Positions 5,712-45,833 of a stretch of 64,000 nt of DNA are shown one piece after another; the stretch's first letter is position 1, and every line of letters starts with the position of its first letter. The notes under the pieces were generated by a model. The model ran no database searches. It had not been told where the DNA came from and saw only the letters and a program-made list of their open reading frames with translations. The DNA is taken from positions 62,001 to 126,000 of the IMG/VR virus record IMGVR_UViG_3300025309_000006. One strand, 5' to 3'. The translations under genes and the position numbers were made by a program.

Positions 5712-7145
5712 ATGATGAAAAAATGTTTTTTAGATGAGTTGCCCAGATGGGGAAAAGCAGAAAAAGTAACAGATGGTAAACAAGGGACTATTAATTGGAA
5801 AGAATCAATAGGATATATTGTTAAATTCATTTATGATAATATTGAAGGGGAAATTGAAATTGTTGATTATAACAAAAGTTATCTAGATATAAAATACAAA
5901 GATGAGGATATATATAATATATATTCAGGCACTTTTACAAAATGTCAATTAGGTATTTTACTAAATAAAAAAACTAAAAAGTTTAGAGTAGAAATAGGTA
6001 CTATATTTAAAGACAACAAAAGAGATATAATTATTACAAATAAAGAATATAAAGATAATCCTTATAATAAAGGAAATAAATTGAAATGGTATAATTATAA
6101 GTGTAATAAGTGTGGATGGGATGAAGGATGGATAGAAGAAAGTGTCTTAATAAGAGGACAAGGTTGTTCATGTTGTACTGGTCAAATAGTAGTAGAAGGT
6201 ATAAATGACATTCCAACAGTTGCTCCTTGGATGGTAAAATACTTTCAAGGAGGGTACGATGAAGCAAAATTGTATACAAAAGGTTCTAATCACAAAATAT
6301 ATCCAATTTGTCCAGATTGTAATAAAGTAAAAAATAAATCTATGGAAGTATGTTCAATATATGCCAATCGCTCTATTGGGTGTAATTGCGGAGATGGAAT
6401 TAGTTATCCTAATAAAATTGTATTTCATCTATTGAGTCAATTAAATTCTGAATTTGTTTCTGAAGCTTCTTTTAATTGGACTACAAAAAGATATGATTTT
6501 TATTTATCCTTATTTAAAAGTATTGTAGAGGTACATGGTTTACAACATTATAAAGAAAAACAAAGATCAAAAACAAGTAGAAATCTCAAAGAAGAACAAA
6601 AAAATGATAAATGCAAAGAAGAATTAGCAAAAGAAAATGGAATTAATAATTACATAATAATTGATGCTAGATATTCTGAGTTAGAATTTATAAAAAGTAG
6701 TATATTAAATAGTAAACTAAATGAATTGTATGATTTGTCAAAAATTCAATGGATTAAATGTGAAGAATTCGCATTGTCGAATTTAACTAAAAAAGCATGT
6801 GAATTAAAATGTAATAATTTTAGCACAACTAAAATTGCTGAGATAATGAAATTAGGGGTAAGTACAGTTATAGCATATTTAAAAAGAGGAACGAAAATAG
6901 GATGGTGTAATTATAATCCCAAAGAAGAAATGATTAAGGCAGTTACTAATAATGGCAAAATGAATGGTAAACCAGTAGAAATATTTAAAAATAATATTTC
7001 TTTAGGAATATTTGAGAATTGTCATGAGTTAGACCGACAAAGCGAAAATGTTTTTGGAATTAAATTAAATTATAGTTCTATATCATCTGTCTGTCGTGGT
7101 GAAACAAATCATTATAAAGGATTCATTTTTAAGTATGTTATTTAA
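5712..7145 (+). CDS. Free-standing homing-type endonuclease (Zn ribbons, PD-(D/E)XK-like core, HTH, NUMOD1-like)
   Basis: CxxC pairs; YDFY...IVEVHGLQHY core; C-terminal SSISSVCRG...YKGFIFKY; paralogous to 55122..56834. Confidence 0.75.
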   Translation: MMKKCFLDELPRWGKAEKVTDGKQGTINWKESIGYIVKFIYDNIEGEIEIVDYNKSYLDIKYKDEDIYNIYSGTFTKCQLGILLNKKTKKFRVEIGTIFKDNKRDIIITNKEYKDNPYNKGNKLKWYNYKCNKCGWDEGWIEESVLIRGQGCSCCTGQIVVEGINDIPTVAPWMVKYFQGGYDEAKLYTKGSNHKIYPICPDCNKVKNKSMEVCSIYANRSIGCNCGDGISYPNKIVFHLLSQLNSEFVSEASFNWTTKRYDFYLSLFKSIVEVHGLQHYKEKQRSKTSRNLKEEQKNDKCKEELAKENGINNYIIIDARYSELEFIKSSILNSKLNELYDLSKIQWIKCEEFALSNLTKKACELKCNNFSTTKIAEIMKLGVSTVIAYLKRGTKIGWCNYNPKEEMIKAVTNNGKMNGKPVEIFKNNISLGIFENCHELDRQSENVFGIKLNYSSISSVCRGETNHYKGFIFKYVI

Positions 7146-13233: not shown

Positions 13234-13977
13234 TTATTTATTCATTGATAATTCTATAATTAGCTCATTTTTATACCTAATTTTTTCATTATTGAGTCTA
13301 ATTATTTCCGTAGCATGATCAATTGCATTTGAAAGAACATTATTTAACTTTAACATATTTTCTTTAATATTTAGTCCATTTTTACACTCTGATAAAATCT
13401 TCTTAAATTCTTGTTTAATTTCTAAACTCTCATTTGGTATATATAATTCTGCACAATAATCTAAATCTAATACACTATTATTAGGTTTATTTAATTTACT
13501 AAGATCACAAGTTAAGAGATTTTTTAAAGTTTTAACATCTTGTGAATCTTCTTCAGTGTCTTCTGTTTTTACTTTTATATAATTTAAATAAGGTAAATTT
13601 TCTAAAATATCATTCAAACTTAAATCAAATAATTCTCCACTTTTTCTTCTCTTATTATCAAAGAATTCATGTAATATTTTTTCTGTTTCGTAGTAATTTA
13701 CATGTGGTTGTGATAATAACATTAATTTGCTGTTACTCTCACATTCATCTACAAGACTATAATTTTTAAATGTACTATTTATGTTTTGTATTCTAATTAT
13801 TGGATTTTTCGTACATCCAATTTTTAAGTAATCACCATATGGAACAATATATACATATCCAAAATAGGGAATGTCAGAATATATAGATTTAACATAATTA
13901 AATATACTGTTAATATGATTTCCGATATACCAAGGTTCTCCATTTATTTCGATGACTTTAACTTCTTCGTTTAACAT
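13234..13977 (-). CDS. T5orf172/MUG113-like GIY-YIG protein
   Basis: GYVYIV...KIGCTKNPIIR...EKILHEFF...GELF. Confidence 0.75.
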   Translation of the reverse strand: MLNEEVKVIEINGEPWYIGNHINSIFNYVKSIYSDIPYFGYVYIVPYGDYLKIGCTKNPIIRIQNINSTFKNYSLVDECESNSKLMLLSQPHVNYYETEKILHEFFDNKRRKSGELFDLSLNDILENLPYLNYIKVKTEDTEEDSQDVKTLKNLLTCDLSKLNKPNNSVLDLDYCAELYIPNESLEIKQEFKKILSECKNGLNIKENMLKLNNVLSNAIDHATEIIRLNNEKIRYKNELIIELSMNK

Positions 13978-15298: not shown

Positions 15299-15402
15299 TA
15301 CAGAGGATAAAAGTTGAGAGTAATTAACTCAATGGGCAAACTCCACCCTCCTCTGTATTTATATATTTTTATGGTTTAGGTGGAGTAAATAAAAATTGGA
15401 GG
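15299..15402 (+). promoter_or_regulatory. Structured leader RNA, copy B
   Basis: P1 TACAGAGGA/TCCTCTGTA; P2 TTGAG-AGTAATTAA-CTCAA; P3 loop ACTCCA complements GTGGAGT (15380-86) and TGGAG at the RBS. Confidence 0.65.
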
Positions 15403-15413
15403 ATGAAAGAGAT

Positions 15414-16562
15414 ATGAGTAAGAAATATACATATGAAGAAGTTAAGAAATTTGTTAATGATTTAGGATATGAATTAATTGGTGAATACAGAAATAGTCAT
15501 GAAAAAATAATCTTAAAAGATGTATTTGGTTATTATTATTCAATTAATTTAAATAATCTAAAAAACAATAAAATTCCTAGTAAATTCGGAATTGATAATC
15601 CGTATATAATTATAAATTTAAAATTGCTGTTAATTTTAAATTTTAATGAATTTTATTTAGTTGAAGATAATGATTATTCTGGAGTTAAAAGCAAAATAAT
15701 TTTAAAAGACAAATTTGGTTACTTTTATAGTGTTTCAGTGGATAGTTTACAACAAAATAAATATCCATTAAGATTCCACCCATCAAATCCTTTTAGTATT
15801 CAGAATATCAAATTATGGCTTAATTTAAATAATAAATCATTTAAATTAGTAAGTGCTCAGTATAAAGGAAATGATAAGCTTTTGATTTTTATAGATAAAA
15901 ATAGGTATTACTATAATTGTCGTTTTGCAGACATGCAAAGAGGCAAGGTTCCAGACAGATTTAATAAAAGCAATGTATTTACGATAGACAATATAAAACT
16001 TTGGTGTAAATTAACAAATAAAGATTTTGAATTATTAAGCAATAAATTTTTAGGGAGTGGCGATTATTTAAAATGGAAATGTTTAAAATGCAATGATGAA
16101 TTTGATAAAATTTGGGAAAATATTAAAGAAAATAGAGGTTGTCCAGCATGCAACAAATCTAAAGGGGAAAAGGAATGTAAAAGGGTTTTTCTTTCTAAGG
16201 GTTTTATTGAAATTACTCAAGAAGATTATAATAAACTATTAGATATTGATAAAAATCTTAATATATATATTATCTGTCAGAAAACTTTTGAAGGTTTATT
16301 AGGGATTAGAAATGGTTTATTATCATATGATTTCTTTATACCTAAATATAACTTGCTTATTGAATACCAAGGAGAATTTCATGATGGTAATGGAAATTAT
16401 TATATGAAGAAAAATCTTAAGAAGCAAAAAGAACATGACAGACGTAAGAGAGAATATAGTGAAAATAATAACATTAACTTATCAGAAATTTGGTATTGGG
16501 ATTATGATAATATAGAAAATATTTTAGATAAGATTTTAGACAAAGAAGAGTTTGCGGGTTAG
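15414..16562 (+). CDS. Free-standing endonuclease (repeated DNA-binding modules, Zn ribbon, DUF559/PD-(D/E)XK-like domain)
   Basis: Three ~75-aa repeats (L.D..GYYY...NP...NIKL); CLKC...CPAC; SKGE...YDF...IEYQGEFH...D..K...IWYWD. Confidence 0.75.
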   Translation: MSKKYTYEEVKKFVNDLGYELIGEYRNSHEKIILKDVFGYYYSINLNNLKNNKIPSKFGIDNPYIIINLKLLLILNFNEFYLVEDNDYSGVKSKIILKDKFGYFYSVSVDSLQQNKYPLRFHPSNPFSIQNIKLWLNLNNKSFKLVSAQYKGNDKLLIFIDKNRYYYNCRFADMQRGKVPDRFNKSNVFTIDNIKLWCKLTNKDFELLSNKFLGSGDYLKWKCLKCNDEFDKIWENIKENRGCPACNKSKGEKECKRVFLSKGFIEITQEDYNKLLDIDKNLNIYIICQKTFEGLLGIRNGLLSYDFFIPKYNLLIEYQGEFHDGNGNYYMKKNLKKQKEHDRRKREYSENNNINLSEIWYWDYDNIENILDKILDKEEFAG

Positions 16563-18411: not shown

Positions 18412-19496
18412 TTGGATGACTTAAATATATTAATCAAAGCGAAACTTTCATCAACAAAAAAAGAAATTGAAGATCAAATAGTTTCACTAAACGCAAAAAT
18501 TACAAAAGCTATTTCTGTAAAATTAAAAATTGATGCTTCTGGATTAAATAGCGTTACTACTGCAATTAATAAAGTAAAACAAACAGCACAACAAGCCAGT
18601 AATCAAAAAATTGATGTATTTAATAGAAAACAACTAGAAGCTGACGGAAGACAATTTTTTATGTCTTCTTCCAATATAGTTGAAAGAGTTAAAAAAGAGT
18701 TTAAATCTCTTGGAACAGTTGATGTGAATTTTTTAAAGAATTCTCAAAAAGATATAATTGGTTTTACAGCAAATGTAACAAAGGCAAATGGAGTTGTTGA
18801 GAAACTAAAATTCGATATAGCAAGAATACAATCTGGAAATAGCGTACAAAGAGGTTATGTTTTTAGTGGTGCAAATTTAATTGATAATAATGCCGGATCA
18901 AATATACAATCTGCATTGAACAAACTTCAAGTTTATGAAAACAAAATTGCAAAATTAAGAGTTGGATTTACCTCTCCCGCAACTGGTATAAAAGATGCAG
19001 AAAATCTGTCTGCATTAACTGCTCAATATAATAGGATTAAGTCAACCATTGACCAAGTAAGAGCAAGCAATACGAGTTTATCTAACGAACAAAGAAGAGG
19101 AATAATCCAAAATATTAGCAACTTAGAATTGCAAATATCAAGATATAGAGATTTACAACGTGTCATGGCAACAACAAATACTAGAACTTTAAGTGCTAAT
19201 GATATTTCATTATATCAAGGGAATATGGCAAATAGATTAGCTAGTTTACAAGTTGGTAAAGAAACTATTTTTGCACGACCAGAAATCCAAGCACAAGTAG
19301 CAAGATTAACAGCAGATGTGGCTAGATTTGGTACAGTTGGTGGAAGGTCGGTTAGAGAGTTAAATTTACAATTTGCTCAATTAACAACGTCTGTAAGAAG
19401 TGCTACAGCAGAAATTACAAGGATAAATGGTGCTGCCGATAGTTTTTTGACAACGCTTACAAAAAATTTCGGTAAGATGCTTGCGTGGGGTTTGGT
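18412..19496 (+). CDS. Tail tape measure protein, exon 1
   Basis: RBS AGAGGTGG with TTG start; helical TMP N-terminus ending KMLAWGL-V; joins exon 2 in frame after intron removal. Confidence 0.8.
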
Positions 19497-19815
19497 GGAA
19501 ATTAAACTGCCGTTTGTAGTGAAAGTGATAATGTAACTACAAATCATGAGAGGGGAAATTCGAAAGAGGGTCATTGACCTAGTATCGAGAGGGCTTGTAT
19601 CACAAGTCTTTGTAACGCATAGGGATTGAGCAATATGATAGCAAAAATATCCCCAAGAGTCTCCTCCTTCTTATCACCTTTGTTTTATAAAAACAATGCG
19701 AAGAAAATATATGCTAAACTGGTCTGAATCGACAGACGTATCGTTTTGAAAATATAAACGTATGAAGGCAACTTCCAGAACATAGGGATAAAAAGCCTTA
19801 TGGATAATAACATTG
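19497..19815 (+). ncRNA. Group I intron (IA-like, ORF-less, 319 nt) in the tape measure gene
   Basis: Exon ends in U19496 paired U.G in P1 (UGGU|GG...CUGCCG); terminal G19815; P2, P3, P4 (UUCGA/UCGAG), P5, P6, P7 (A-c-GCAUA/UAUGCU), P7.1, P8 and P9 helices readable; splicing restores WGLVATAMYAPLR. Confidence 0.85.
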
Positions 19816-22800
19816 AGCTACCGCAATGTACGCGCCACTCAGGTCTTTGCAGGCTGGTCTGACCACATTAAAAGAATTAGATGGATTAATGGTAAATATT
19901 GCCAAGGTAACTAATCTTAGTGCTGAAGCTATGGACAATTTAAAAAATAGTGCCTTTGAAGCGTCGAATGCTTTTGGACGTACTGCGCAAGACTATTTAA
20001 AATCAATCGGTGAATTTAGTCGTGCTGGATATGAAGGAAAATCAGCAGATTTAGCTAAAATTTCTTTATTATCACAAAACGTTGGTGAATTAACAGCAGA
20101 ACAAGCCAATAGTTTTTTACTTGCCACGGATGCTGCTTATAAATATAAGGGTAGTCAAGAAGAATTAATGAAAGTTCTTGATGGCGTAAATACTATTGAT
20201 AACAAGTTCGCAACTTCAATTCAAAAGGTTTCTGAAGGTATAACCGTGGCTGGATCTATATCTTCAAACGCATCAGTTGGAGTAAATGAACTAGCTTCAG
20301 CAGTTGGAGTTATGACTGCGGTGACACAACGTTCGGGAAATGAGGCTGGACGGGCATTTCGCAGTATTTTGATGAACATCAGACAAATTAAGGGAGAAAC
20401 TGAAGACGGAGAAATAATAGACGATGCTGCATTATCTAAATCAGCAGAAGCATTAGATAATGTTGGTATTAAAGTTCATGAATTGCGAAATGGTGTTGAA
20501 GAGATAAGAAATCCAATGGAAGTTCTTAAAGAATTATCTACCATTTGGGGTTCACTCAGTTCCATGAAAACTGCTCCAATTATAGATTCTTTGGGTGGAA
20601 AATTTAGAGGAAACCAGTTAGTGGCTCTAGTAGAAAATTTTGATATGTATGAAAAAATGCTTTCTGAATACTCTACTGCTTCCGGTTCGGCTATGACTGA
20701 GAATGAAGTGAGAATGGGCAGTTGGGAAACCAAGATTAATCAGCTCAGAAATGCAATAAATAATTTCTGGAATAATACTATTGACACAGGTTTTGTTAAA
20801 AGTATGATAGGTGGAATAACTCTATTAATAAACAACTTTGGTAATCTGAAAACTATTTTAGGATTAATATTTACCTTACTTGCAGTAAATAAAGGTACTG
20901 CTTTCTTAACATTCTTAAAGAACTTATCTTTATCTACTATGCTATTAAATTCTAGTCTAGTTCAAACACAAGCTAGATTAGCAGGAATGTCCTTCGCTCA
21001 AATCGGAGTAATGGGTACAACTACAGCATTAACTTTTGCAATTAAAGGTTTATGGGCTACTATGCTTGCTAATCCAATTGGTTTAGTTGTAGGTGCTGTT
21101 ACTGCTGTCATAGTGGCATTTGATTTTATGGGAGCCAGAGCAGAAAGTTCTGCAAAAAAACAAAAAGAAGCATTTGATGAACTTAATAGAAGCATTAGTT
21201 CTCTTAAGCAACAAACAGCAGAAAGTAAGAATTTAGCAAACCAATATGAATCTTTATCTGCTATTACATCTCGTAATAGCAATGAGGAGGCTAAATTAGC
21301 CGAAGTTAAAGATCGTTTAATTGCTCAATTTCCTGATCTAATTGAAGGATACGATGCTGAAGGTCGCTCAATAATAGGTTCATCAGAAGCAATTAAACAA
21401 GCAATCAAAGAAAATGAAGAATTATTGGCGATTAAACAAGAACAAATGTCTAATACATTTGTTACTGATGGTTCAAATAATTTCTCTCAATTACAAAAAG
21501 ATCAAGAAAGATTGGATTTATTAACTCAGCATAAAAAAGAATATTTAAAGACGATTGATGATATTAATAATGGAAACCAAGTTAAATTTGATGAATATGG
21601 AAATGATTCATTAGTAATTGCTAAAAATAATTTAAAAGGTATAAAAGACGAATTATCTACGCTTAGTACAAAAATCCTTGAAAGTAGAAAAGATTTATCA
21701 GTTTTAACAGATTCGTTTTTAAAAAGTGGCGATTCTGCACAATCTTTAGGTAAAGAAGTAGTTACAAAATTAATCTATGATTTGAGTAAACTTAAAGACG
21801 AAAGTAAAATTACAGGTGAAGAGTTTACTAAAATATTCGATGGTCTTAAAAGTTCTGATTTTTCTTCTGAATTAAGCAAAGCAAAAACAGAATTAGAAGA
21901 ATTAGCAAAAAGTGGGGCAAGCAAAGATGTAATTGGTAACACTTACGAAAAAGCAATTTCTGATTTGTCTCCATATTTAAAAGCATTAGGAATTAATGGA
22001 GAAGAAGCAGGGAAAATATTAAAAGATATGCTCAATCTCCCCAATGCCACAGAAACATCTAATAAAATAAATACTGTAACTACATCCCTCAAATCACTCC
22101 AAAAAACTCTCTCTGATTCTTCATCTGCAATTACCGAAATTCAATCTGCTCTCGATGAATACGCAGAGAATAAAGCTTTTTCGCTTGACACTCTAGTAGC
22201 ACTTGGCGATAAACATGAAAGCCTAATAGGAATCCTTGGCGACGAAAAAGCTGTTCATCAAGAATTAACAAACATTATAGAACAAGAGCAAGAAAAAGCC
22301 AGACAAGCATATATTACCATGCTTAATGATAGTGAAGATTTCTATAATAAAAATATTGAAGGTATACAAAAGTTTGTTGCTGGACTAGATGGTGCTCGTG
22401 AAGTCGATCTATCTGGAGCAAAATCATTAGCTGAAGCAAAATTAAAAGTTGAAAATGAGTTGATGAAAAATTTAGCCGGAATGTGGTCGCAATATTACGA
22501 TGCACAAGGTAATATGACCAATGCTAATATTATTGATGGCGGTAGAACTATTGTAGGCCAAGACGGTAAAGAAACCTATATTACTCCTGAAATGAGATCA
22601 CAACTTAAGGCGTATTATGATGCTTCTTCGGCAGTTAAGAAGAAATTTGATGACATTGCAATGAGTGGAACAAAAAGCATTGATTTTTCTAAACTTGGCA
22701 TGTCTAAAAGCGACAATAAGAAAGACAAAGAAAAACCCCAAATCGAATCCACAACAGAAGCCCTCATCAATCAAATCCAACAAGAATATCTCCTTCAAAA

Positions 22801-24655
22801 AGCCAAATCGGATTCAATCCAAAAAGACCTCTCTCAAGCACAATCCCAAAAAGACTACCAAAAAACTCTCTCCCTAACTAATTCCCTAATTTCCTCACAA
22901 GCTCAAGAATTATCCCTTCTTAACACAGCTCGTTCCAAAATAAACCAAGCAAAAGATTCTGCTATATCATCTGCATCCTCTCAATTTGGAGATGTTAGTG
23001 AAAGATGGTTTACTGGAAATGACAATCAAGAAAGCGTTGCATATATTGAAGAACATAATAAAGCATCAGAAAAAACTCGTGAGATAATGGATGAGACTTT
23101 TAAATCACTTCAATTACTTCGTAATGCTTGGATGTCTAATAAATCTGCTATGGATGAAAATGCAGAATCACAAAAAGTTCTTCAATCCACCCTCCCCGAC
23201 ATAAACTACTCCATCGTAACAGACCAAATATCCAAGTTTAATTCCTCCATAGACTCTCTAAATTCTCAACTTGACCTATCTAAAGCTAGAATGTCTCTTC
23301 TGGAAAATACTTCATCAGATTACAGTAAAGAATTATCTCTCCAAACATCTCTTTACAAACAATTATCTGATGAACAATTAAAATCAATTGCTTATATGAC
23401 TCAACAATTAGCAAGTGATAATTTATCTATTGAGGCAAAAAAAGAACTTTCAAAATCAATAGAAGAAGCAACTCTGTCTCAGCTAAATTATCAAAAAGCA
23501 ATTCAAGATTCAGCAAAACAACTCGCTACAGATGTAATCGAAGCTCAAAAAGCACTAGAACAAGCAGAGTTAGATGCAGAAGAAGAAATCCTGAAAGCAT
23601 ACATCAAACGTAGAGAAGAAAAAATAAAAGGTATTCAAGAAGAGATTGATGCTCTAGAAAAGAAAAATGAAAAAGAAGAAGAATCGGAAGAAAGAGCAAA
23701 GCGTCTCTTAGATATCGAAGAAAAAAAACAAAAACTTAATAATGTCTTAAATGAGGAAAATACTAGAATTCTTGTAGGTGATACTTGGACTTGGCAAGCA
23801 AACCCGAATGATGTAAAGTCTGCACAGGATGATCTAAAATCTGCTCAAGAAGACTATCTAGACTGGGAAGATGATGTCAACCTAAAACATCAAAGAGCGA
23901 CTCTTCAAGCAGAAATAGATTATCAACAATCACTAATCGACACAAAACAAGCATCATTCGATGCTCAAAAACTCCAATTTGATGAACAATGGGTAAATTT
24001 AGATGCAATGTCAACTCAATTATTAGAACAATATGAAAACAACGTTGATTCTGTAGTTGCAATTTTAAGTGAAAAATTAGTATCACTAAATGCTCAATTA
24101 GCAGAAATTGTAAATGCATCTACTTCTCTTCCAGATAGTTTATCAGGCGGTAGTAATAGTGGAAGTTCAGGTTCATCTGGTTCTTCATCTTCAAATGAAA
24201 ATGATTTTAATGTAACAAAAAGAGGTAGTTATAATCCTGATACTGGTAATTATTCTATAACAGATGAAGATGGAAATACTCACAATGGAAATGGTTCGTT
24301 AGAAGATTATGAGAATGATTTTGACAGGTATCATGATGGTGGCTGGGTTGGTGATAAACCTAAAAATTTAAAATTAAATGAAATTCCAGCTATTCTTCAA
24401 AAAGGTGAATTTGTTTTAAGTGAAAAAATGCTTAGTGGTTTACCTAATTTTATGGATATTACAAAAAATTATATGAATAATATTAAATTGCCTCAAATGC
24501 CTAATTTCATTAATAATGTGAGTAATGTTAATAAAAGTGGCAGTAATGGAGGGAATATTATTATTCAAAATCAAACAATAATTACGCCTAATGTCGATAA
24601 TTTTAAATCACAAATGTCTAGTTTAATGAGAATGACAAAAACTCAGGATTTTTAA
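19816..24655 (+). CDS. Tail tape measure protein, exon 2 (spliced product 1974 aa)
   Basis: TP901-type TMP core (FSRAGY...TQRSGNEAGRAFRSI), coiled coils, C-terminal YHDGGWVG...PAILQKGEFVL. Confidence 0.9.
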
Positions 24656-36485: not shown

Positions 36486-36681
36486 AATAATTATTCTTTA
36501 TAAAGATAGACTTCTTAGATTTGGTTTTGAATTAATAGAAGATTTAATTCAAATTATTACTGTATTTAGTTGCAGACTTCAAGGGAAACGAGCAAACAGA
36601 ACTAGAAAAATGATTGATGATTTAATTAAGGAAGGAGATGAGGAAATTGATAAAGGGAATCAAAGTGATGCTTGTACCTAA
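36486..36681 (+). pseudogene. tnpA: Truncated IS607 serine recombinase TnpA
   Basis: ILYKDRLLRFGFELI|EDLIQIITVFSCRLQGKR; lacks the N-terminal HTH and catalytic Ser and has an internal deletion. Confidence 0.85.
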
Positions 36682-37828
36682 CAATAAGCAGAATACATTA
36701 ATGTTTCAAAATGCTGGAGTTAAAAGATGGGCTTTCAATTGGGCATTAGGTAGAGAAAAGGAAAATTATGCTAATGGTGGTAAGTTTATTTCTGATAATG
36801 ATCTTAGGAAAGAATTAACTCAATTAAAGCAAACTAAAGAGTTTAGTTGGTTAAACAATGTTTCTAATAATGTACCTAAACAGGCAGTTAAAGATGCTTG
36901 CATTGCATATCAGAGATTCTTTAAAGGTCAAGCAAAATTCCCTAAGTTCAAAACTCGAAAGAAATCTCCTCCTAAATTTTATCAAGACAATATTAAAATT
37001 CAATTCACATCTACTCATGTTAAATTTGAAGGATTTGCTAAAAGTAAAAAGGCAAATAAGCAAAAGTTGAACTGGGTGAGATTAGCTGAACACAATAGAA
37101 TTCCTTTTGGTAAAGATGTTAAGTATATTAATCCAAGAGTGTCGTTTGATGGTTTAAATTGGTTTATTAGCGTAGGGATTGAATATCCTGATAATGTTGA
37201 AACTCCATTAAATGAAGGAATTGGCATTGATTTAGGAATTAAAGATTTAGCGATATGTTCTGATGAAAAAACTTATGGGAATATCAATAAAAATAAGAAA
37301 ATGAAACGATTAGAAAAGCAAAAGAAGCGATTACAAAGACAAGTTTCTAAGAAATATGAAGATAACCGTGATGGTTTGAAATATATTAAAACCAAGAATA
37401 TTATTAAGTTGGAACTTAAGATAAAATCAGTTCAGCATAAACTTAATGGCACTAGAGATAATTATCTCCATCAAACAACTTCTGAGATAGTGGGACGAGA
37501 ACCAAGTCATATTACTATTGAAGATTTGAACATTCAAGGAATGATGAAGAACAGAAACCTATCCAAAGCAATTCAACAACAATCTTTGTATGAATTTGGT
37601 AGACAGTTGAAGTATAAAGGATTGTGGAATCATATTGAGATTAGAATTGCTGACAGATGGTATCCAAGCTCAAAGACATGTCATGATTGTGGTAAAGTTA
37701 ACAAGTTGTTAAATTTAAATGACAGAGAATGGGTTTGTACTGGTTGTGGAAGTATTTTAGACAGGGATTATAATGCTTCATTAAATTTAAGAGATACTAA
37801 CAATTACAAGATATTTAAAGTAGTATAG
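36638..37828 (+). CDS. tnpB: RNA-guided endonuclease TnpB
   Basis: RuvC D (GIDLG), E (IEDL), D (DRDYNAS); Zn finger CHDC...CTGC. Confidence 0.92.
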   Translation: MRKLIKGIKVMLVPNNKQNTLMFQNAGVKRWAFNWALGREKENYANGGKFISDNDLRKELTQLKQTKEFSWLNNVSNNVPKQAVKDACIAYQRFFKGQAKFPKFKTRKKSPPKFYQDNIKIQFTSTHVKFEGFAKSKKANKQKLNWVRLAEHNRIPFGKDVKYINPRVSFDGLNWFISVGIEYPDNVETPLNEGIGIDLGIKDLAICSDEKTYGNINKNKKMKRLEKQKKRLQRQVSKKYEDNRDGLKYIKTKNIIKLELKIKSVQHKLNGTRDNYLHQTTSEIVGREPSHITIEDLNIQGMMKNRNLSKAIQQQSLYEFGRQLKYKGLWNHIEIRIADRWYPSSKTCHDCGKVNKLLNLNDREWVCTGCGSILDRDYNASLNLRDTNNYKIFKVV

Positions 37829-37996
37829 GTAAAAACATATACTCGGACGTTGCCGAGGAATTTAAGCTCTTGGAGTGTTAAGCAACTTGAGTAGCATTAG
37901 AAATAATGTGAAAAAGAACACGATGAATGGAAAATGAAACATAGAGTTATAACTTATTTGTTTAATTTATAACTTCTTATAAGTTTTCAGTAACGG
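37829..37996 (+). ncRNA. Putative TnpB omega-RNA scaffold (guide = flank from 37997)
   Basis: Non-coding right end after tnpB with hairpins (CTCGG-ACGTTG-CCGAG); location expected from TnpB biology. Confidence 0.65.
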
Positions 37997-45537: not shown

Positions 45538-45702
45538 ATGAGTTTAACAGATGATGCTTTAGAAACTGCCAAATATGTTAATGATTTATTAAATGGTGAC
45601 TCCCAAAAACTAAAAAGGATTTATGAACATCTTTGTGTACATGATATTATAATGTATCATGCTTCAAAAGAACAAATGCTTGATATTTTTAAAGATATCT
45701 AA
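45538..45702 (+). CDS. Small hypothetical protein (54 aa)
   Basis: RBS GAGGTG after the consensus promoter. Confidence 0.55.
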   Translation: MSLTDDALETAKYVNDLLNGDSQKLKRIYEHLCVHDIIMYHASKEQMLDIFKDI

Positions 45703-45744
45703 TCTCCCATTGACATAAATCCTAAAATAATATATCATAACAAA

Positions 45745-45833
45745 CATAAGTGATTAATTTTCATTTTTCATTTATAAACTCTTTCTTTCATCCTCAAGAG
45801 GGAGTCTTTGTAATGAAGATTTCCTCATTTTTT
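45745..45833 (+). ncRNA. Candidate small RNA with a CU-rich anti-SD segment
   Basis: TTGACA-N17-TATCAT (45710-38), no ORF, terminator GAGGGAGTCTT/AAGATTTCCTC plus T-run. Confidence 0.45.

What the first reader, a model, noticed from the sequence alone, without database searches (positions are those of the whole stretch)
19497..19815. ORF-less group I intron with a non-canonical P7 in the tape measure gene
Seen: the TMP is broken into two ORFs; excising 19497-19815 (after U, ending in G) restores KMLAWGLVATAMYAPLR. P7 reads A-c-GCAUA/UAUGCU instead of the usual GACUA/UAGUC: the G-C pair of the guanosine-binding site is kept while neighbouring pairs change compensatorily. Inference: tail assembly depends on splicing, unspliced RNA yields a separate 374-aa product, and one of the free-standing nucleases may mobilise the intron in trans.
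Basis: partly seen in the sequence, partly recalled or inferred. Interest (0 to 1): 0.7.

Follow-up and report, generated by a model that had tools for sequence, protein, structure and literature searches.

The report
Self-splicing intron in phage tail-length gene
The gene for the tail tape measure protein of this large groundwater phage is interrupted by a 319-base self-splicing group I intron without a gene of its own; this is a known kind of element, here from a lineage with an unusual catalytic-core helix that the standard RNA database model misses.

Summary
Window 19497-19815 (319 nt) follows U19496 and ends in G19815. Removing it fuses the 374-aa and 1609-aa ORFs into one 1974-aa tape measure protein (TMP). 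That product aligns without a gap across the junction to uninterrupted TMPs.

The insert is a group I intron of the phage IA type:
- About 44 relatives from viral and metagenome contigs share P2-P9.2, including the P3/P7 pseudoknot, with heavy compensatory change (96.6% of cells paired; 40-52% when partners are slid).
- A covariance model built from the family hits the proven T4 nrdD (sunY) intron core, helix for helix.
- Four metatranscriptomes hold intron-only RNA of ~94%-identical relatives, with the 3' G joined back to the 5' end. These look like excised circles.

P7 is A-c-GCAUA/UAUGCU instead of A-c-GACUA/UAGUCU, a double compensated swap beside the retained G-C pair. It is fixed in a whole clade. 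Rfam RF00028 finds nothing on the window's element, nor in two other family members' genomes.

Group I introns in TMP genes, some without a complete endonuclease gene, were described in 2008, so this is a new member of a known kind.

The parts
18412..19496 (+). TMP exon 1 (361 codons plus 2 nt). TTG start preceded by the Shine-Dalgarno sequence GAGGTGG.
   Evidence: alignments to continuous TMPs begin inside it and run across the junction
19497..19815 (+). ORF-less group I intron, 319 nt
19816..24655 (+). TMP exon 2. It matches phrog_4211 (TMP) from profile position 597 onward, and PF10145. There is no Shine-Dalgarno sequence before its first ATG (19826).
19493..19512 (+). P1: exon UGGU (19493-96) plus intron GG (19497-98) pair with the internal guide sequence CUGCCG (19507-12). 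U19496·G19509 is the splice-site wobble pair.
   Evidence: MFE fold; the exon tetramer and the guide covary in relatives: UGGU/GCCG, CGGU/GCCG(C), GGGU/GCCC, GGGU/GCUC
19534..19536 (+). In-frame UAA 13 codons into the intron; it ends the 374-aa reading of unspliced RNA
19513..19543 (+). P2 hairpin: UUUGUAGU (19513-20) / ACUACAAA (19536-43)
   Evidence: a different but self-complementary stem in relatives
19550..19666 (+). P3: GAGGGG (19550-55) / CUCCUC (19661-66)
   Evidence: all 6 pairs show compensatory changes; 99.3% of cells paired
19560..19588 (+). P4 UCGA (19560-63) / UCGA (19585-88), enclosing P5 GGGUC (19568-72) / GACCU (19576-80)
19589..19611 (+). P6/P6a hairpin: GAGGGCUUGU / ACAAGUCUUU
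19615..19715 (+). P7: A19615, bulged c19616 and GCAUA (19617-21) pair with UAUGCU (19710-15). G19617-C19714 is the presumed guanosine-binding pair.
19622..19653 (+). P7.1 (the IA-type extra helix between P7 and P3'): GGGAU (19622-26) / AUCCC (19649-53)
   Evidence: 3 of 5 pairs covary; 99.2% of cells paired
19667..19703 (+). P8 CUUC (19667-70) / GAAG (19700-03), with distal stem P8a 19680-86 / 19690-96
19719..19778 (+). P9 three-way region: CUGG/CCAG closing the hairpins GUCUG/CAGAC, CGUUU/AAACG and GAAG-GCAA-CUUC
19781..19802 (+). P9.2 hairpin CAUAGGG / CCUUAUG with the conserved loop AUAAAAAG
   Evidence: 6 of 7 pairs covary
19815..19815 (+). Terminal guanosine (omega-G) at the 3' splice site
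   Evidence: invariant last column in 24 of 24 aligned members; it is the joined 3' end in the RNA circles of relatives
15396..16562 (+). Context only: free-standing HNH homing-endonuclease-like ORF 3 kb upstream of the intron
   Evidence: phrog_559 E 1e-41; 28.7% identity over 150 aa to the ORF inside the terL intron of Clostridium phage vB_CpeS-1181

Best explanation
Window 19497-19815 is a functional, ORF-less group I intron of the phage IA type that interrupts a single tape measure gene (18412-24655).

Inferred mechanism, from the established group I pathway. The internal guide CUGCCG pairs with the end of exon 1, placing the U19496·G wobble pair at the 5' splice site. A free guanosine docks on the G19617-C19714 pair of P7 and cleaves after U19496. 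The terminal G19815 then occupies the same site, and the exon 1 3'-OH attacks after it. This yields a continuous mRNA for a 1974-aa TMP reading ...AWGLV-ATAMY....

The released intron, or a 3'-hydrolysed precursor, can close on itself through G19815 into a circle. Unspliced transcripts terminate translation 13 codons into the intron.

The intron belongs to a large clade in which the two P7 pairs next to the guanosine-binding pair are swapped: GACUA/UAGUC has become GCAUA/UAUGC.

Shown here: the boundaries, the fold and its conservation, homology to a proven ribozyme, collinearity of the spliced protein, and circular intron RNA in close relatives. Inferred: catalysis by this exact copy, and its efficiency in vivo.
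For: 1. Frame and protein. Excision restores one ORF. BLASTP of the spliced product against uninterrupted TMPs aligns straight across residue 361/362 without a gap: MT835723 at query 314-700 (E 2e-66), Sundance at 204-935, vB_BcoS-136 at 353-928. Exon 2 starts at position 597 of the 2625-position TMP profile phrog_4211. Homologues carry 650-720 aa in the same ORF before that point. There is a Shine-Dalgarno sequence before 18412 but none before the ATG at 19826.
2. Structure. RNAalifold on a plain MAFFT alignment of 24 ORF-less relatives recovers P3, P6, P7.1, P8 and P9.2 unaided; 20 of 26 pairs show compensatory change. The full core including the P3/P7 pseudoknot gives 96.6% of cells paired, against 76.7% when shuffled and 40-52% when slid. 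20 of 32 pairs change on both sides, and 0 of 500 shuffles reach any measure. The single-sequence MFE fold finds the same helices.
3. Homology to a proven ribozyme. Model R1, built from this family, hits the T4 nrdD intron core over its full length (32.9 bits, E 1e-6 to 2e-6). Its P3, P4, P5 and P8 fall on the helices Rfam marks there.
4. RNA. Runs X13, X18, X19 (wetland) and X20 (sediment) come from four studies. They hold contigs covering only the intron, with zero depth on both exons. Joints 19810 -> 19503 carry AAATTGAAA or AACGAAA, and one 318-nt contig is a permuted whole intron. The DNA runs show no such joint.
5. Guide-sequence logic in relatives. The exon tetramer and the guide covary. 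P10 is 4 bp in L036 and 8 bp in Staphylococcus phage 6ec.
6. Six diverged TMP-site relatives keep the intron with compensatory changes in P6 and P9.2.
Against: - Rfam RF00028 gives no hit on the element even at E<=10.
- No transcript of this exact phage was available. The RNA evidence comes from ~94%-identical relatives, and as assembled contigs rather than raw reads.
- No ligated-exon read was seen.
- P10 with exon 2 is only about 2 bp at this site.
- The single-sequence fold z-score is modest (-1.79).
- No intron-less allele of this TMP was found.
Confidence: 0.92

Rival explanations
1. The intron is real by descent but is now splicing-defective, or needs a protein cofactor. The phage would then make little or no full-length TMP from this copy, or depend on a host or phage maturase-like factor.
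For: No direct splicing evidence for this copy. P10 is weak. The altered P7 layer lies next to the guanosine site. RF00028 is blind to the element.
Against: Every core helix is intact. The variant P7 is fixed across a large clade with strictly complementary states. Identical copies occur in several independent assemblies, and diverged TMP-site relatives show compensatory changes. Near-identical relatives accumulate as excised circles in RNA. The TMP is indispensable for a tailed phage (established knowledge).
Confidence: 0.06
2. There are two genuinely separate genes, a 374-aa protein and a 1609-aa TMP, separated by a structured non-coding spacer that is not removed.
For: Both ORFs are open. 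Exon 1 alone has no database homologue.
Against: Alignments to continuous TMPs cross the junction without a gap. Exon 2 lacks the first ~600 profile positions and has no ribosome-binding site. The spacer is a group I core homologous to T4 nrdD. Relatives' RNA ends exactly at the predicted intron termini.
Confidence: 0.015
3. The RNA 'circles' are artefacts or tandem DNA copies, so they say nothing about excision.
For: They are Logan contigs, not raw reads. The runs come from other sites. DNA can contaminate RNA libraries (tool caveat).
Against: The same kind of joint appears in two sequence variants and four studies. There is zero coverage of flanking exons, depth reaches 58, and DNA runs that hold the locus show no such joint. 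Even if the circles were discounted, the intron diagnosis stands on structure, homology and protein collinearity.
Confidence: 0.1

Closest known systems
T4 nrdD (sunY) group IA intron
   Same: The family model aligns to its core over the full length. It shares P3-P8 order, J3/4 AAA(A), J8/7 GAAGAUAU, the bulged C in P7, P7 followed by GAACU, and an extra helix between P7 and P3'.
   Different: T4 has P7 GACUA/UAGUC, two extra helices (P7.1 and P7.2), and a GIY-YIG endonuclease ORF (I-TevII) downstream of the core. Here P7 is GCAUA/UAUGC, there is a single P7.1 with an inner hairpin, and there is no ORF.
Group I introns in TMP genes of Bacillus cereus-group prophages (TMP-IVS1, 2, 3; Tourasse & Kolstø 2008, PMC2504315)
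   Same: Group I introns of classes IA1/IA2 inserted in tape measure genes; some lack a complete homing endonuclease gene.
   Different: Different hosts and insertion sites. Whether any of them carries the swapped P7 could not be checked, because figures are not held and no Bacillus genome handle was available.
HNH-carrying intron in the TMP gene of Staphylococcus phage 6ec (annotated as three separate genes)
   Same: Same RNA family (R1 85 bits), same host gene type, the same P7 variant, and clear P1 and P10 pairings.
   Different: A different TMP position (…VVQLG|NNMATQ…), and it carries an HNH ORF in the P5 region.
Twort orf142 introns (structurally solved IA2 ribozyme family)
   Same: Compact phage IA introns; RF00028 scores 64-101 bits.
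   Different: Canonical AACGACUA…UAGUCUGAAC. R1 does not recognise them (best E about 1).
ORF-less intron in a tail gene of mycobacteriophage BAKA (Pope et al. 2013, PMC3706429)
   Same: A small ORF-less intron in a virion tail gene, following U and ending in G; splicing was shown by RT-PCR.
   Different: Unrelated host lineage; relatedness of the RNA was not tested.

Membership tests
Group I intron | Conserved core helices P3-P8 in canonical order, with the P3/P7 pseudoknot | tested here: met
   32 core pairs, 96.6% of cells paired, 20 pairs with compensatory change; the slid and shuffled controls are far lower. RNAalifold finds most helices independently.
Group I intron | 5' splice site after a U that forms a U·G wobble pair in P1 with an internal guide sequence | tested here: met
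   U19496·G19509 within UGGUGG/CUGCCG. Exon and guide covary in relatives inserted elsewhere.
Group I intron | Terminal guanosine (omega-G) at the 3' splice site | tested here: met
   G19815. The last column is invariant G in 24 of 24 members. It is the ligated end in the RNA circles of relatives.
Group I intron | Guanosine-binding G-C pair in P7 next to a bulged nucleotide | tested here: met
   A-c-G19617…C19714-U is identical in position to T4 nrdD and the Twort introns. Invariance within the family is partly by construction of the search pattern.
Group I intron | Sequence and structure homology to an experimentally proven self-splicing intron | tested here: met
   R1 against T4 nrdD: 32.9 bits, E ~1e-6, model positions 1-175; its helices coincide with the RF00028 annotation.
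Group I intron | Reaches the Rfam RF00028 gathering score (50 bits) | tested here: not met
   No hit at E<=10 on the element, and none in two other family members' genomes. This is a database criterion, not a biochemical one. RF00028 also scores the known T4 td and nrdB introns below cut-off.
Group I intron | Excision restores a reading frame collinear with intron-less homologues | tested here: met
Group I intron | Excised intron RNA exists (linear or circular) | tested here: inconclusive
   Seen for ~94%-identical relatives in four metatranscriptomes. No RNA data exist for this phage itself.
Group I intron | Guanosine-dependent self-splicing in vitro | not testable with these tools
   Needs bench work.
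Subgroup IA (IA1/IA2) | Extra pairing(s) P7.1/P7.2 between P7 and the 3' strand of P3 | tested here: met
   P7.1 19622-26/19649-53 covaries. There is only one outer helix, with an inner hairpin, against P7.1 plus P7.2 in T4 nrdD. The assignment to IA1 versus IA2 is therefore left open.
Mobile (endonuclease-encoding) group I intron | Homing endonuclease ORF inside the intron | tested here: not met
   No sense-strand ORF lies within 19497-19815. Many relatives carry HNH or other ORFs in the P5 region.

The most novel reading that the evidence does not exclude
The GCAUA/UAUGC (and GCGUA/UACGC) P7 clade may be a distinct subclass of phage IA introns that Rfam cannot see. The layer of the guanosine pocket directly under the G-C pair is rebuilt in it. 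Its ORF-less members may persist as abundant, stable RNA circles in natural communities. If so, the circles might have a role of their own, such as spread by reverse splicing or a post-splicing function, rather than being waste.
Probability: 0.15. Interest if true: 0.55.

Novelty: new member of a known kind. Interest (0 to 1): 0.35.

Why it matters
For annotation: the two ORFs should be joined as one TMP of 1974 aa. The same intron family splits TMP, terminase and other genes in many deposited phage genomes, where it is left unannotated or called as separate genes.

For RNA biology: the clade shows a clean, natural double compensatory exchange in P7 next to the guanosine-binding pair. It also shows that RF00028 misses a sizeable group of phage introns.

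The intron-only circular contigs in metatranscriptomes are a rare environmental sighting of excised phage group I intron RNA.

None of this changes the understanding of how group I introns work.

Tried and rejected
- Rfam cmscan gave only chance matches at the locus, on the window at gathering score and on the locus at E<=10. cmscan also failed to report the 42-bit RF00028 match that the genome search finds elsewhere in this genome. A negative from cmscan is therefore weak evidence.
- blastn of the intron against phage records found only its 3' 40-50 nt. That hit was nevertheless the lead to the terL intron of vB_CpeS-1181.
- A short 3'-end pattern returned mostly chance hits.
- tblastn with exon 1 alone found nothing.
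- A covariance model of the full intron (268 positions) could not be calibrated, so a 175-position core model was used instead.
- A scan for an intron-less allele of this TMP junction in viral contigs found none.
- Eleven pattern hits were discarded as chance matches: three tRNA genes and eight others, mostly GC-rich bacterial DNA.
- Translational bypassing, an intein and a group II intron were considered and dropped. The insert is 319 nt, out of frame, and has a group I core.

Full report
**Observation.**
The window is part of a 227-kb phage contig from a groundwater metagenome. ORF 18412-19536 (374 aa, TTG start behind the Shine-Dalgarno sequence GAGGTGG) and ORF 19826-24655 (1609 aa) lie in different frames. 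Base 19496 is U and 19815 is G. Deleting 19497-19815 (319 nt) gives one frame of 1974 codons reading ...KMLAWGLV|ATAMYAPLR.

**One gene, not two.**
- Exon 2 matches the TMP family phrog_4211 at E 3e-109, but only from profile position 597 of 2625. It also carries PF10145.
- tblastn hits to Bacillus and Brevibacillus phage TMPs start at residue 2-4 of exon 2. In those phages 650-720 residues precede that point in the same ORF.
- BLASTP of the conceptually spliced product against three uninterrupted TMPs runs through the junction (residue 361/362) without a gap. The alignment starts 9, 48 and 158 residues upstream of the junction, inside exon 1.
- No ribosome-binding site precedes the ATG at 19826.

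**The insert is a structured RNA family.**
Its last ~50 nt match the 3' end of an ORF-containing interruption of the large terminase gene in Clostridium phage vB_CpeS-1181. They end one base before that gene's second exon. A pattern built on J6/7-P7...J8/7-P7' retrieved 24 viral, 46 metagenome and 9 genome loci. After removing chance hits and duplicates, about 44 distinct members remain.

Six are diverged copies at the same TMP site (L145, L162, L170, L173, L196, L191). Others sit in other genes. Many carry an endonuclease ORF in the P5 region.

On a plain MAFFT alignment of 24 ORF-less members, RNAalifold by itself predicts P3, P6, P7.1, P8 and P9.2; 20 of 26 pairs are compensated. For my full core structure, including the P3/P7 pseudoknot:

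| Measure | Value |
|---|---|
| Cells paired, structure as given | 96.6% |
| Cells paired, 3' letters shuffled | 76.7% |
| Cells paired, partners slid by 1-3 columns | 40-52% |
| Pairs changed on both sides | 20 of 32 |
| P3 pairs that covary | all 6 |
| Shuffles reaching any observed measure | 0 of 500 |

The single-sequence MFE fold of the window copy gives the same helices.

**It is a group I intron.**
- The 175-position model R1 built from the family core finds only the TMP copy in this genome (138.9 bits).
- In phage T4, R1 matches 45666-45826(-) over its full length (32.9 bits, E about 1e-6). This is the core of the nrdD (sunY) group IA intron, just upstream of I-TevII.
- RF00028 scores the same T4 segment at 105 bits and marks the same P3, P4, P5 and P8.
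- The group I splice-site rules hold. U19496 pairs with G in the guide CUGCCG, and the terminal G is invariant in all 24 aligned members.
- In relatives inserted elsewhere the guide covaries with the exon: UGGU/GCCG, CGGU/GCCGC, GGGU/GCCC, GGGU/GCUC.
- The guide also pairs with the start of exon 2 (P10): 4 bp in L036 and 8 bp in Staphylococcus phage 6ec.

**P7.**
The Rfam consensus, T4 nrdD and all three Twort orf142 introns read AACGACUA ... UAGUCUGAAC. This family reads UAACGCAUA ... UAUGCUGAAC. The bulged C and the G-C pair are kept, and the next two pairs are exchanged (A-U, C-G to C-G, A-U).

I repeated the database scan with those four bases left free. Distinct sequences by combination:

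| Free bases (5' strand / 3' strand) | Distinct sequences |
|---|---|
| AC/GU (canonical) | 39 |
| CA/UG | 38 |
| CG/CG | 9 (some are chance hits) |
| any other combination | 1 or 2 each |

The CA/UG and CG/CG tallies also draw on loci from the earlier metagenome and genome scans, so the three counts are not a like-for-like frequency comparison.

RF00028 finds nothing on the element at E<=10. It also finds nothing in the genomes of two other members.

**RNA evidence.**
No transcriptome of this phage exists. However, four metatranscriptomes from four studies (three wetland, one sediment) hold contigs about 94% identical to the intron.
- They cover only 19503-19810, with zero depth on either exon and depth up to 58.
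- They join 19810 back to 19503 through AAATTGAAA (runs X13, X18, X19) or AACGAAA (run X20).
- One 318-nt contig is a complete permuted intron.
- DNA runs holding the locus show no such joint.

Read against the TMP-site relatives, which all begin GGA..., the junction is omega-G ligated to the third intron nucleotide. It would be a full-length circle if that relative's intron starts with A. Both truncated and full-length circles are known group I products (PMC3679873). The RNA termini thus coincide, within two nucleotides, with the predicted splice sites.

Caveats: these are assembled contigs, they come from relatives, and no ligated-exon read was seen.

**Context and mobility.**
The intron has no ORF. 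The window holds two free-standing HNH endonuclease-like ORFs (5712-7145 and 15396-16562) and a T5orf172 nuclease-like ORF (13234-13977, minus strand). The HNH ORF at 15396 is distantly similar (28.7% over 150 aa, E 1e-6) to the ORF inside the vB_CpeS-1181 terL intron, which is a member of the same RNA family. That is compatible with mobilisation in trans but does not show it. No intron-less allele was found.

**Comparison with what is known.**
Group I introns in TMP genes were described in Bacillus cereus-group prophages: three sites, classes IA1/IA2, some without a complete endonuclease gene (PMC2504315). An ORF-less spliced intron in a mycobacteriophage tail gene is also on record (PMC3706429).

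The present family is widespread in deposited Staphylococcus, Clostridium, Clostridioides and Bacillus phages and in crAss-like phages, mostly unannotated. It also splits the TMP of Staphylococcus phage 6ec at another site.

The element is therefore a new member of a known kind. The swapped P7 and the failure of RF00028 are the only unusual points.

**Verdict.**
This is a genuine group I intron (confidence about 0.92), very probably splicing-competent. Interest is modest.

Noticed in passing
window 36638-37934: A transposase ORF of the IS200/IS605-TnpB kind (36638-37828, phrog_506 E 9e-103) is followed 39 nt downstream by a RAGATH-18 RNA motif (37867-37934, 48.4 bits, above the gathering score). 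This looks like a TnpB-type element with its guide-RNA region inside a phage genome.
   Followed up: partly
G000:C1:30988-31308 (L006 1501-1821), about 5 kb upstream of the window: A second, unrelated group I intron candidate in the same phage: RF00028 42 bits over the full model, below the cut-off of 50, and not recognised by R1. An ORF ends about 35 nt into it. The next sense ORF of 60 aa or more starts about 290 nt after it.
   Followed up: partly
window 5712-7145, 15396-16562, 13234-13977(-): Two free-standing HNH homing-endonuclease-like ORFs, both matching phrog_559, phrog_9084 and phrog_4538, and one T5orf172/MUG113 nuclease-like ORF lie among the structural genes. The 15396 ORF resembles the endonuclease encoded inside another member of this intron family.
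   Followed up: partly
L224 (Staphylococcus phage 6ec, NC_024355 20536-28605): The TMP is annotated as three genes: 'minor tail protein', an HNH endonuclease and TMP. In fact it is one TMP split by an HNH-carrying intron of this family, with an 8-bp P10 (AACAAUAU/AUAUUGUU).
   Followed up: yes
L131 1203-2519: Three R1 matches (60-83 bits) lie within 1.3 kb on one strand. These are several introns of the family packed into one gene region, like Twort orf142.
   Followed up: no
L001 (Clostridium phage vB_CpeS-1181, MW478292 839-3793): The large terminase is annotated as two CDSs plus a 'hypothetical protein'. The gap is an endonuclease-carrying intron of this family (R1 75.5 bits).
   Followed up: partly
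L209 (Clostridioides phage ES-S-0173-01, CP067352 92451-92647): The best-scoring family member outside the training set (R1 145 bits), in an unannotated 113-kb phage record. The interrupted gene was not identified.
   Followed up: no
tool behaviour, L006: cmscan in 'evalue' mode did not list the 42-bit RF00028 match that the genome search reports for the same DNA. Negative cmscan results for group I introns should therefore be read with care.
   Followed up: partly
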